Below, piece after piece: positions 11,370 through 11,870 of a stretch of DNA of 56,855 nucleotides; the first letter of the stretch is position 1, and the number at the start of each line of letters is the position of its first letter. The stretch covers positions 29,587,917 to 29,644,771 of the forward strand of contig NC_068996.1 in assembly GCF_001194135.2 (NCBI RefSeq). The letters are read 5' to 3'. A model generated the notes under the pieces. It searched no databases and was not told the DNA's origin. It worked only from the letters and a program-made list of their open reading frames with translations. Origin of the DNA: Octopus bimaculoides. Lineage: Eukaryota. Position numbers and translations under genes: made by a program.

Positions 11370-11709
11370 GTAAGTTTCATTTTCTCCTGAAAATCAATAA
11401 CAAAAAATTTATGCTGAATATTATAATTTGAAATAGATTTTGATATTCATTTAAGACAAAAGTCAGTTAGTGCAAAAGTATTCAATAATTGTGTATAGCA
11501 TTAATGGTTGTATGAGCTTGTAATAAGTACTAGGTGGCTTAGTTAATGAACTACTAAAAATTAAATCCTAATAAACTGTTTTAAAAATAGTGAAGTTGAA
11601 ATTATTGTTTGTGTAAATTAATACATCCATACTTGGCTACACTAATTTTTCATATTATAAAAGGAATCTTTAGAAACTCTTACATTTTGTTTATTGCTTT
11701 ACTTTTTAG

Positions 11710-11727
11710 AGCGCTCCCATGTCTAAA
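11710..11727 (+). CDS. Candidate 18-nt alternative microexon of CBP (inserts ALPCLK)
   Basis: ttgcttttactttttAG acceptor, GTAGGT donor, frame-preserving in a phase-2 intron, no stop; no transcript evidence available. Confidence 0.55.
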
Positions 11728-11870
11728 GTAGGTGTGTTTGTGTATGATTTTTGAATTCAATTAATTCATATTACTTATATTCGCAAAACTAATTCAATAA
11801 CTTTCGTACCTTTTTTTTCTAAATTATTTTAAAATTCTTAAATAATAATATAAACAATTTTGTTCTTTAG

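What the first reader, a model, noticed from the sequence alone, without database searches (positions are those of the whole stretch)
11691..11733. Unannotated 18-nt in-frame microexon with a UGC motif at the CBP PHD finger
The sequence reads ttattgcttttactttttAG|AGCGCTCCCATGTCTAAA|GTAGGT. It has a good acceptor and donor and is 18 nt long. In the phase-2 intron it converts ...DLEP|FVECLEC into ...DLEP-ALPCLK-FVECLEC with no stop. TGC at 11695-97 lies in the pyrimidine tract ~15 nt upstream, the arrangement established for neural microexons controlled by SRRM4/eMIC-domain proteins in bilaterians. The GC-rich 18-mer stands out in a very AT-rich intron. Inference: a neuron-specific CBP isoform with an extra Cys just before the PHD zinc ligands, possibly tuning HAT regulation in cephalopod brain. 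Too short for ORF tracks and most annotation.
Basis: partly seen in the sequence, partly recalled or inferred. Interest (0 to 1): 0.78.

Follow-up and report, generated by a model that had tools for sequence, protein, structure and literature searches.

The report
Unproven 18-nt microexon in CBP
An 18-base stretch inside an intron of the CBP/p300 acetyltransferase gene does look like a tiny in-frame exon, but look-alikes this good are expected by chance about once in every few such gene regions, nothing here shows it is ever spliced in, and it is most likely a decoy.

Summary
AG at 11708-9, an 18-nt segment at 11710-11727 and GT at 11728-9 lie in the 501-nt phase-2 intron between two CBP/p300 exons (11313-11369 and 11871-11948). 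Inclusion would insert ALPCLK between ...DLEP and FVECLEC..., with no stop. A TGC lies 15 nt upstream.

Nothing shows that the segment is used.
- Its donor (AAA|GTAGGT) scores below all six real donors scored in this gene.
- A better-scoring donor 4 nt downstream would give a 22-nt exon with an in-frame TAG.
- The BP-AG distance, the AG-free zone and the T-rich tract do not match the SRRM4/eMIC layout beyond the UGC. About a third of pyrimidine-rich intronic AGs here have a UGC anyway.
- Equally good in-frame, stop-free AG...GT pairs are expected at 0.011-0.024 per kb. That is 0.25-0.7 per CBP intron set in this window.
- None of 212 CBP/p300 sequences from other animals has an insertion at this junction.
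- No cephalopod genome or transcript could be reached, so conservation and expression remain untested.

Most likely this is a chance pseudo-microexon (about 0.8). A real cephalopod microexon remains possible (about 0.1). It would lie next to the residue equivalent to p300 E1242, at the RING-PHD hinge.

The parts
11313..11369 (+). CBP/p300 exon A (57 nt). It encodes (x)RIQKDAFSKMKNDQLDLE-P(cc), the end of the RING-PHD linker. Acceptor ttattacag|G, donor ACC|gtaagt.
   Evidence: tblastn to CBP homologues; boundaries read from the sequence; same intron position and phase in L001.
11678..11683 (+). Possible branch-point sequence tCTTAc (yUnAy, A at 11682), 27 nt upstream of the candidate acceptor AG. 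It is not the strong CUAAY form.
   Evidence: Read from the sequence. The last AG upstream is at 11672-3, giving an AG-free zone of 34 nt.
11684..11709 (+). T-rich pyrimidine tract plus acceptor AG (11708-9): attttgtttatTGCtttactttttAG, with the TGC at 11695-7. Approximate PWM score 4.28; the six real acceptors score from -1.2 to 12.3.
11710..11727 (+). Candidate 18-nt microexon AGCGCTCCCATGTCTAAA. If spliced in, it inserts ALPCLK between DLEP and FVEC. It is 50% GC in a 23% GC intron, and the palindrome GAGCGCTC (11709-11716) spans its 5' edge.
   Evidence: No evidence of use.
11728..11733 (+). Candidate donor AAA|GTAGGT. Approximate PWM score 1.37, below all six real donors scored in the gene (2.1-6.7). 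The in-frame TAG at 11729-31 closes the frame if this donor is not used.
11732..11737 (+). Competing donor TAG|GTGTGT, 4 nt downstream, PWM score 3.54. With the same acceptor it gives a 22-nt exon (11710-11731) that carries an in-frame TAG and shifts the frame.
11871..11948 (+). CBP/p300 exon B (78 nt): FVECLECGRKLHQICALYFEPLWPN-G, the second half of the PHD finger. No AG occurs in the 137 nt upstream of its acceptor, back to 11731.
18995..19065 (+). Next CBP exon C (71 nt): FYCDNCCKTKGKQGKKEGKYTCK. It is listed to fix the reading frame of the gene model.

Best explanation
The 18-nt segment is most likely a chance pseudo-microexon, that is, a decoy pair of splice-site-like sequences. In a T-rich intron, a run of pyrimidines ending in AG happens to lie 18 nt upstream of a mediocre GT. 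The 18 nt between them happen to be a multiple of three and free of stops in the CBP frame. On this reading the spliceosome joins 11369 directly to 11871, and the segment is removed with the rest of the intron. The upstream TGC and the GC-rich palindrome are incidental.

Shown: the sequence, the frame, the relative splice-site scores and the chance rate. Inferred: that the segment is not used.
For: 1. Chance rate. AG-(3-30 nt)-GT pairs with both scores at least as good as this one occur at 0.03-0.05 per kb on both strands of the real window. There are three unrelated ones, at 43942, 53553(-) and 20432(-). A consensus-count criterion gives the same rate. Third-order Markov simulations give 0.011-0.024 per kb for in-frame, stop-free pairs, or 0.25-0.7 expected in the roughly 24-30 kb of CBP intron in the window.

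2. Weak donor. AAA|GTAGGT scores 1.37, below all six real donors scored in the gene (2.1-6.7). A better donor 4 nt downstream (3.54) would give a 22-nt exon with an in-frame TAG.

3. The UGC is weak evidence. A TGC lies within about 30 nt upstream of 32% of pyrimidine-rich intronic AGs here. It is found in 74-79% of true SRRM3/4 microexons (10.1101/2024.09.17.613571). The likelihood ratio is therefore only about 2-3.

4. Other hallmarks are absent. There is no UCUC-rich tract, the BP-AG distance is short (27 nt), the AG-free zone is ordinary (34 nt) and the branch point is CUUAC rather than CUAAY.

5. No insertion at the EP|FV junction occurs in 212 CBP/p300 sequences from other animals: 76 + 28 + 108, overlapping taxa, many RNA-seq-derived. 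The orthologous 424-nt intron of another animal (L001) has no microexon-like pair even at relaxed thresholds.

6. Base rate (inference). Genome-wide, decoys of this quality should outnumber real microexons by roughly ten to one or more.
Against: Within this particular 501-nt intron the pair is unusual: about 0.01 expected, and it is the only pair in the intron even at acceptor and donor scores of 0 or more.

The acceptor is as good as several real ones in the gene, and a plausible branch point lies at -27.

The UGC lies between the predicted branch point and the AG, as in most SRRM3/4 targets.

The segment is the only GC-rich island in the intron.

The insertion falls at the N-terminal edge of the PHD_P300 model (after profile position 4) and lowers the score only from 61.1 to 52.0 bits. 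The protein could probably tolerate it.

Neural microexons are mostly lineage-specific (10.64898/2026.09.05.749416), so absence in insects and other phyla says little about cephalopods.
Confidence: 0.8

Rival explanations
1. It is a real, tissue-restricted (probably neural) 18-nt microexon of cephalopod CBP. In neurons an eMIC-domain Srrm234 protein binds the UGC between the branch point and the AG, and helps U2AF/U2 recognise the 3' splice site of an exon too short for exon definition. [quoted passage not shown] That is one residue after the equivalent of p300 E1242, and the insertion could shift the RING relative to the HAT substrate cleft and so tune acetyltransferase activity.
For: - The length is a multiple of three, the frame is open, and the AG and GT are in place.
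- A UGC lies between the putative branch point and the AG.
- The acceptor score is within the range of real exons.
- The pair is locally rare, about 0.01 expected in this intron.
- The segment is a GC-rich island.
- The insertion falls at the edge of the PHD_P300 model, not in its core.
- The neighbouring residue E1242 controls RING-HAT contact in p300 (PMC12547938; the residue mapping comes from the p300 sequence as I remember it).
- Recurrent, lineage-specific gain of neural exons is common.
Against: - There is no expression or conservation evidence of any kind.
- The donor is the weakest among the sites scored in the gene, and a stronger frame-breaking donor competes 4 nt away. Vertebrate SRRM3/4 microexons typically have strong 5' splice sites.
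- There is no UCUC element, no long BP-AG distance and no long AG-free zone.
- The window-wide chance expectation is 0.25-0.7.
- No insertion at this junction occurs in 212 CBP/p300 sequences.
- No microexon in CREBBP/EP300 turned up in the literature searched.
Confidence: 0.12
2. It is a cryptic or poison exon. The acceptor at 11710 is occasionally paired with the stronger donor at 11732 (TAG|GTGTGT). This gives a 22-nt exon that introduces an in-frame TAG and a frameshift, so the transcript is degraded by nonsense-mediated decay. That would be either splicing noise or a way to lower CBP dosage.
For: The donor at 11732 scores 3.54 against 1.37 for the in-frame donor. The exon 11710-11731 ends in TAG in the CBP frame.
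Against: The lack of RNA evidence is the same as for the 18-nt version. A 22-nt exon is no easier to define than an 18-nt one. GTGTGT lacks the +3 A and +4 A that most donors in this gene have.
Confidence: 0.04
3. The GC-rich palindromic core (GAGCGCTC, 11709-11716) is an intronic regulatory element. It could be a transcription-factor site or a splicing silencer or enhancer for the flanking constitutive exons. Its resemblance to an exon would then be coincidental.
For: It is the only GC-rich island in a 23% GC intron, and it contains a perfect 8-nt palindrome. The intron is not part of a repeat and has no Rfam match.
Against: An 8-nt palindrome is expected by chance about twice per 500 nt, though less often for GC-rich ones. 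There is no conservation data and no known motif was identified. The idea is not testable here.
Confidence: 0.04

Closest known systems
SRRM4 / Srrm234-eMIC-dependent neural microexons (3-27 nt)
   Same: The length is 18 nt and a multiple of three, and the frame is preserved. A UGC lies between a putative branch point and the 3' splice-site AG. The position is at the edge of a folded domain, and the host gene matters for neuronal function.
   Different: - There is no UCU/CUC-rich tract upstream of the UGC. The T-tract continues after the UGC instead of ending before it.
- The BP-AG distance is only 27 nt and the AG-free zone is 34 nt.
- The branch point is CUUAC, not CUAAY.
- The 5' splice site is the weakest scored in the gene.
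- Inclusion, neural specificity, regulator dependence and flank conservation are all untested.
Pseudoexons / decoy splice-site pairs in introns
   Same: Both splice-site-like signals are moderate, and the pair occurs at the frequency expected from base composition. Three comparable pairs lie elsewhere in the window, on either strand.
   Different: It is in frame, stop-free and carries a UGC. Each is a feature only a fraction of decoys have (about 1/3, 0.7 and 1/3). That is why it caught the eye.
p300/CBP RING-PHD hinge and the E1242K hyperactivating mutation
   Same: The insertion point corresponds to p300 L1243/F1244, next to E1242. Mutating E1242 loosens the inhibitory RING from the HAT domain (PMC12547938).
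   Different: That is a point mutation in a human cancer context. No natural isoform with an insertion at this hinge is known in any animal examined here (212 sequences).
NMD-targeting poison cassette exons
   Same: The same acceptor used with the stronger downstream donor would give a short exon with a premature stop.
   Different: Known poison exons are usually longer and highly conserved. There is no evidence for either here.

Membership tests
CBP/p300 (KAT3) acetyltransferase gene | HAT_KAT11 catalytic domain and p300-type PHD finger in the encoded protein | tested here: met
   Pfam HAT_KAT11 at 217 bits and PHD_P300 at 61.1 bits on the spliced exons. Solved CBP/p300 core structures match at E about 1e-43. 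The ZZ/TAZ2 region and the Q-rich tail are in the last exons.
CBP/p300 (KAT3) acetyltransferase gene | Bromodomain and RING upstream of the PHD | tested here: inconclusive
   These exons were not found in window 1-11312. They presumably lie upstream of the window or in the gap at 1984-2762.
eMIC/SRRM4-dependent neural microexon | Exon of 27 nt or less (up to about 51 nt in broader definitions), usually a multiple of 3 and frame-preserving | tested here: met
   18 nt, in frame, no stop.
eMIC/SRRM4-dependent neural microexon | UGC motif between the branch point and the 3' splice-site AG | tested here: met
   TGC at 11695-7, between the putative branch-point A at 11682 and the AG at 11708-9. However, 32% of pyrimidine-rich intronic AGs here have one by chance, against 74-79% of true targets.
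eMIC/SRRM4-dependent neural microexon | Bipartite enhancer UCU_CUC...UGC, with a long UC-rich pyrimidine tract set back from the AG, a long BP-AG distance and a long AG exclusion zone | tested here: not met
   The tract is T-rich without UCUC repeats and runs right up to the AG. BP-AG is about 27 nt and the AG-free zone is 34 nt, shorter than at four of seven real acceptors in the gene.
eMIC/SRRM4-dependent neural microexon | Strong 5' splice site (vertebrate targets); a weak one is tolerated in Drosophila | tested here: inconclusive
   The donor AAA|GTAGGT scores below all six real donors scored, with a stronger competing GT 4 nt downstream. This fits the fly pattern and not the vertebrate one.
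eMIC/SRRM4-dependent neural microexon | Inclusion in neural tissue and skipping elsewhere | not testable with these tools
   No RNA-seq or transcript contig of the source species or any cephalopod was reachable.
eMIC/SRRM4-dependent neural microexon | Dependence on an eMIC-domain protein | not testable with these tools
   This needs a minigene, knock-down or CLIP experiment.
eMIC/SRRM4-dependent neural microexon | Conservation of the exon and its flanking intron in related species | not testable with these tools
   No related genome was reachable. In distant animals there is no insertion at the junction and no candidate in the L001 intron.

The most novel reading that the evidence does not exclude
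A cephalopod-specific, neuron-enriched CBP isoform. An 18-nt microexon would insert ALPCLK at the hinge between the autoinhibitory RING and the PHD finger, one residue from the p300 E1242 equivalent. Alternative splicing would then set the RING gate on the HAT active site. Because CBP/p300 promote SRRM4 expression in mammals (PMC8451555), it would also place CBP inside its own microexon-regulatory loop.
Probability: 0.1. Interest if true: 0.65.

Novelty: not a real feature. Interest (0 to 1): 0.2.

Why it matters
If real, it would be the first natural splice isoform known to alter the RING-PHD hinge of a CBP/p300 enzyme. Disease mutations at that hinge are known to unleash acetyltransferase activity. 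It would also be an example of independent neural microexon gain in the large-brained cephalopods.

As things stand it illustrates a different point. In AT-rich introns, in-frame microexon look-alikes with a UGC arise by chance at about one per few gene regions. Sequence alone cannot nominate them with confidence.

Tried and rejected
1. Looking for the inclusion or skipping junction in public proteins and transcript contigs. A search with the microexon-containing peptide found only one unrelated genomic ORF. A 298-aa multi-exon query found 408 CBP/p300 sequences, with best identity about 75%, mostly insects and no cephalopod.

2. Exact look-ups of twelve window ORFs, to find the source assembly or same-species contigs. 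None is on record.

3. Metagenome and prokaryote-genome scans for contaminating cephalopod CBP DNA. These gave only a 57%-identical intronless relative (L002) and a fragment (L003), and nothing in genome contigs.

4. Search of the 50%-identity representatives with exon F. Best identity was 92%, from unnamed single-exon ORFs. Their clusters hold no named or cephalopod members.

The same rule is stated for structure prediction, so modelling the inclusion isoform was not attempted.

6. Repeat origin of the intron was rejected: there are no other copies in the window.

7. A structured RNA in or around the intron was rejected: there is only one sub-threshold Rfam chance hit.

8. Literature. No paper links a microexon to CREBBP/EP300 itself, or describes octopus microexons at gene level.

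9. The long AG-free zone upstream of exon B (137 nt) was considered as a sign of regulated splicing. It was set aside because AG-free zones of 91-95 nt occur at two other constitutive acceptors in this G-poor gene.

Full report
**What is there**

The window carries the 3' two-thirds of a CBP/p300 (KAT3) gene on the + strand. Homology to CBP/p300 proteins locates these exons:
- 11313-11369
- 11871-11948
- 18995-19065
- 25219-25366
- 25607-25747
- 26650-26929
- 27043 onwards
- a last exon ending at 35245

The spliced product matches Pfam PHD_P300 and HAT_KAT11. It also matches the solved CBP/p300 catalytic cores at E about 1e-43. The bromodomain and RING exons are not in the first 11 kb of the window.

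**The observation**

The sequence at 11691-11733 is exactly as quoted.
- AG lies at 11708-9, AGCGCTCCCATGTCTAAA at 11710-27 and GTAGGT at 11728-33.
- TGC lies at 11695-7.
- The intron 11370-11870 is phase 2 and 501 nt long.
- Inclusion gives ...DLEP-ALPCLK-FVECLEC... with no stop.
- The intron averages 23% GC, and the only 18-mers of at least 50% GC overlap the candidate.

**Quality of the signals**

I scored sites with an approximate metazoan weight matrix, used only as a ruler.
- The acceptor scores 4.28. The six real acceptors range from -1.2 to 12.3.
- The donor AAA|GTAGGT scores 1.37, below all six real donors (2.1-6.7).
- A plausible branch point (tCTTAc, A at 11682) lies 27 nt upstream of the AG.
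- The AG-free zone is 34 nt, shorter than at four of the seven real acceptors measured in this gene.
- Four nucleotides downstream lies a better-scoring donor, TAG|GTGTGT (3.54). With the same acceptor it would give a 22-nt exon ending in an in-frame TAG.

**Comparison with the eMIC/SRRM4 layout**

The literature describes these cis features:
- a UCU_CUC...UGC bipartite enhancer
- pyrimidine tract and branch point set back from the AG
- long AG exclusion zones
- strong CUAAY branch points
- strong 5' splice sites in vertebrates, weak ones in flies

A UGC between the branch point and the AG is present in 74-79% of targets (PMC8797185; 10.1101/2024.09.17.613571).

The candidate meets the UGC criterion and none of the others. 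In this gene's introns a TGC lies within about 30 nt upstream of 32% of pyrimidine-rich AGs. The motif is therefore worth a likelihood ratio of only about 2-3.

**Chance expectation**

AG-(3-30 nt)-GT pairs with both scores at least as good as the candidate occur at 0.03-0.05 per kb on both strands of the real window. Three are unrelated to the candidate. A simple consensus-count criterion gives the same rate.

Third-order Markov simulations trained on the local introns give 0.011-0.024 in-frame, stop-free pairs per kb. That is:
- about 0.01 for this one intron
- 0.25-0.7 for the roughly 24-30 kb of CBP intron in the window
- correspondingly more for the whole gene

A reader scanning every intron would therefore meet such a candidate in a quarter to a half of windows like this one. 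Requiring a UGC lowers that to roughly 0.1-0.2. Genome-wide, decoys of this quality should outnumber genuine microexons by an order of magnitude (inference).

**Comparative evidence**

No cephalopod CBP sequence, genomic or transcript, could be reached.
- The protein index returned only relatives at or below about 76% identity. Those I could name are insects.
- Exact look-ups of twelve window ORFs found nothing.
- The metagenome and prokaryote-genome scans gave nothing useful.

I could test whether any animal carries an insertion at this junction. None of 212 CBP/p300 sequences does: 76, 28 long representatives and 108 cluster members, many of them RNA-seq contigs or annotated isoforms.

The orthologous intron has the same position and phase in the unidentified animal of L001. 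It contains no microexon-like pair even at relaxed thresholds.

Neural exons turn over fast. Only two bilaterian-ancestral ones were found in a recent 20-species study that includes octopus (10.64898/2026.09.05.749416). This argues only against an ancient exon, not against a cephalopod-specific one.

**Origin of the window**

A retrotransposon reverse-transcriptase fragment in the window is 79% identical to an annotated Octopus vulgaris protein. The AT-rich, microsatellite- and SINE-laden sequence fits an octopod draft assembly. A cephalopod origin is plausible but not proven.

**If it were real**

The insertion falls after position 4 of the 39-position PHD_P300 profile and costs only 9 bits. 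It lies at the edge of the finger, not in its core.

By my numbering of human p300, the junction is L1243/F1244. That numbering is from memory, checked against C1204 and E1242 falling on the expected residues. The junction is then next to E1242, whose E1242K mutation disturbs the inhibitory RING-HAT contact (PMC12547938).

**Verdict**

The interpretation cannot be tested with the data available and leans towards chance. My estimates are:
- decoy pseudo-microexon: about 0.8
- real 18-nt microexon: about 0.1
- 22-nt cryptic or poison exon, or an unrelated regulatory element: a few per cent each

One junction-level look at brain RNA-seq, or an alignment with a second octopod genome, would settle it.

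Noticed in passing
window 13300-13575; copies at 1714-1983 (+), 25051-24852 (-), 49857-49583 (-), 54086-53941 (-): A SINE-like repeat of about 275 nt is present in at least five copies at 91-96% identity. Four of the copies abut runs of N, so the assembly gaps sit at repeats.
   Followed up: partly
window 24006-24379 and 52471-52853: Fragments of a non-LTR retrotransposon reverse transcriptase, interrupted by gaps. The best named match is an Octopus vulgaris 'Reverse transcriptase domain-containing' protein at 79% identity. A 'Herbaspirillum sp.' MAG protein matches at 78%, which suggests host-DNA contamination of that MAG.
   Followed up: partly
window 34472-34552: An uninterrupted run of 27 glutamine codons lies in the C-terminal Q-rich region of the last CBP exon.
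   Followed up: no
window 11732-11870: No AG dinucleotide occurs in the 137 nt upstream of the acceptor of the PHD exon. A consensus-like branch site aaCTAATt lies about 80 nt upstream, which suggests a distal branch point. AG-free zones of 91-95 nt also occur at two other acceptors in the gene.
   Followed up: partly
window 55174-56088: An intact 304-aa ORF downstream of CBP carries a CCCH-type zinc-finger-like motif (CKFYLNGTCWHGEKGRNCKFTHP). It could be a gene or a transposon gag-like protein. The exact sequence is not in the protein collection.
   Followed up: no
window 1-11312: The bromodomain and RING exons of CBP are not detectable upstream of exon 11313-11369. The preceding intron is therefore longer than 11 kb, or an exon is lost in the gap at 1984-2762.
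   Followed up: partly
P0285, P0286 (representative proteins): Two long CBP-like proteins from other animals lack the segment that corresponds to the 57-nt exon 11313-11369 (KNDxLDxEP). That in-frame exon may be skipped or mis-annotated in some species.
   Followed up: no
L002 (JAAUYM010012335.1) 5001-5351: A metagenome contig encodes the whole RING-linker/PHD/HAT-start region (118 aa, 57% identity) without any intron. In the window the same region is split over four exons.
   Followed up: no
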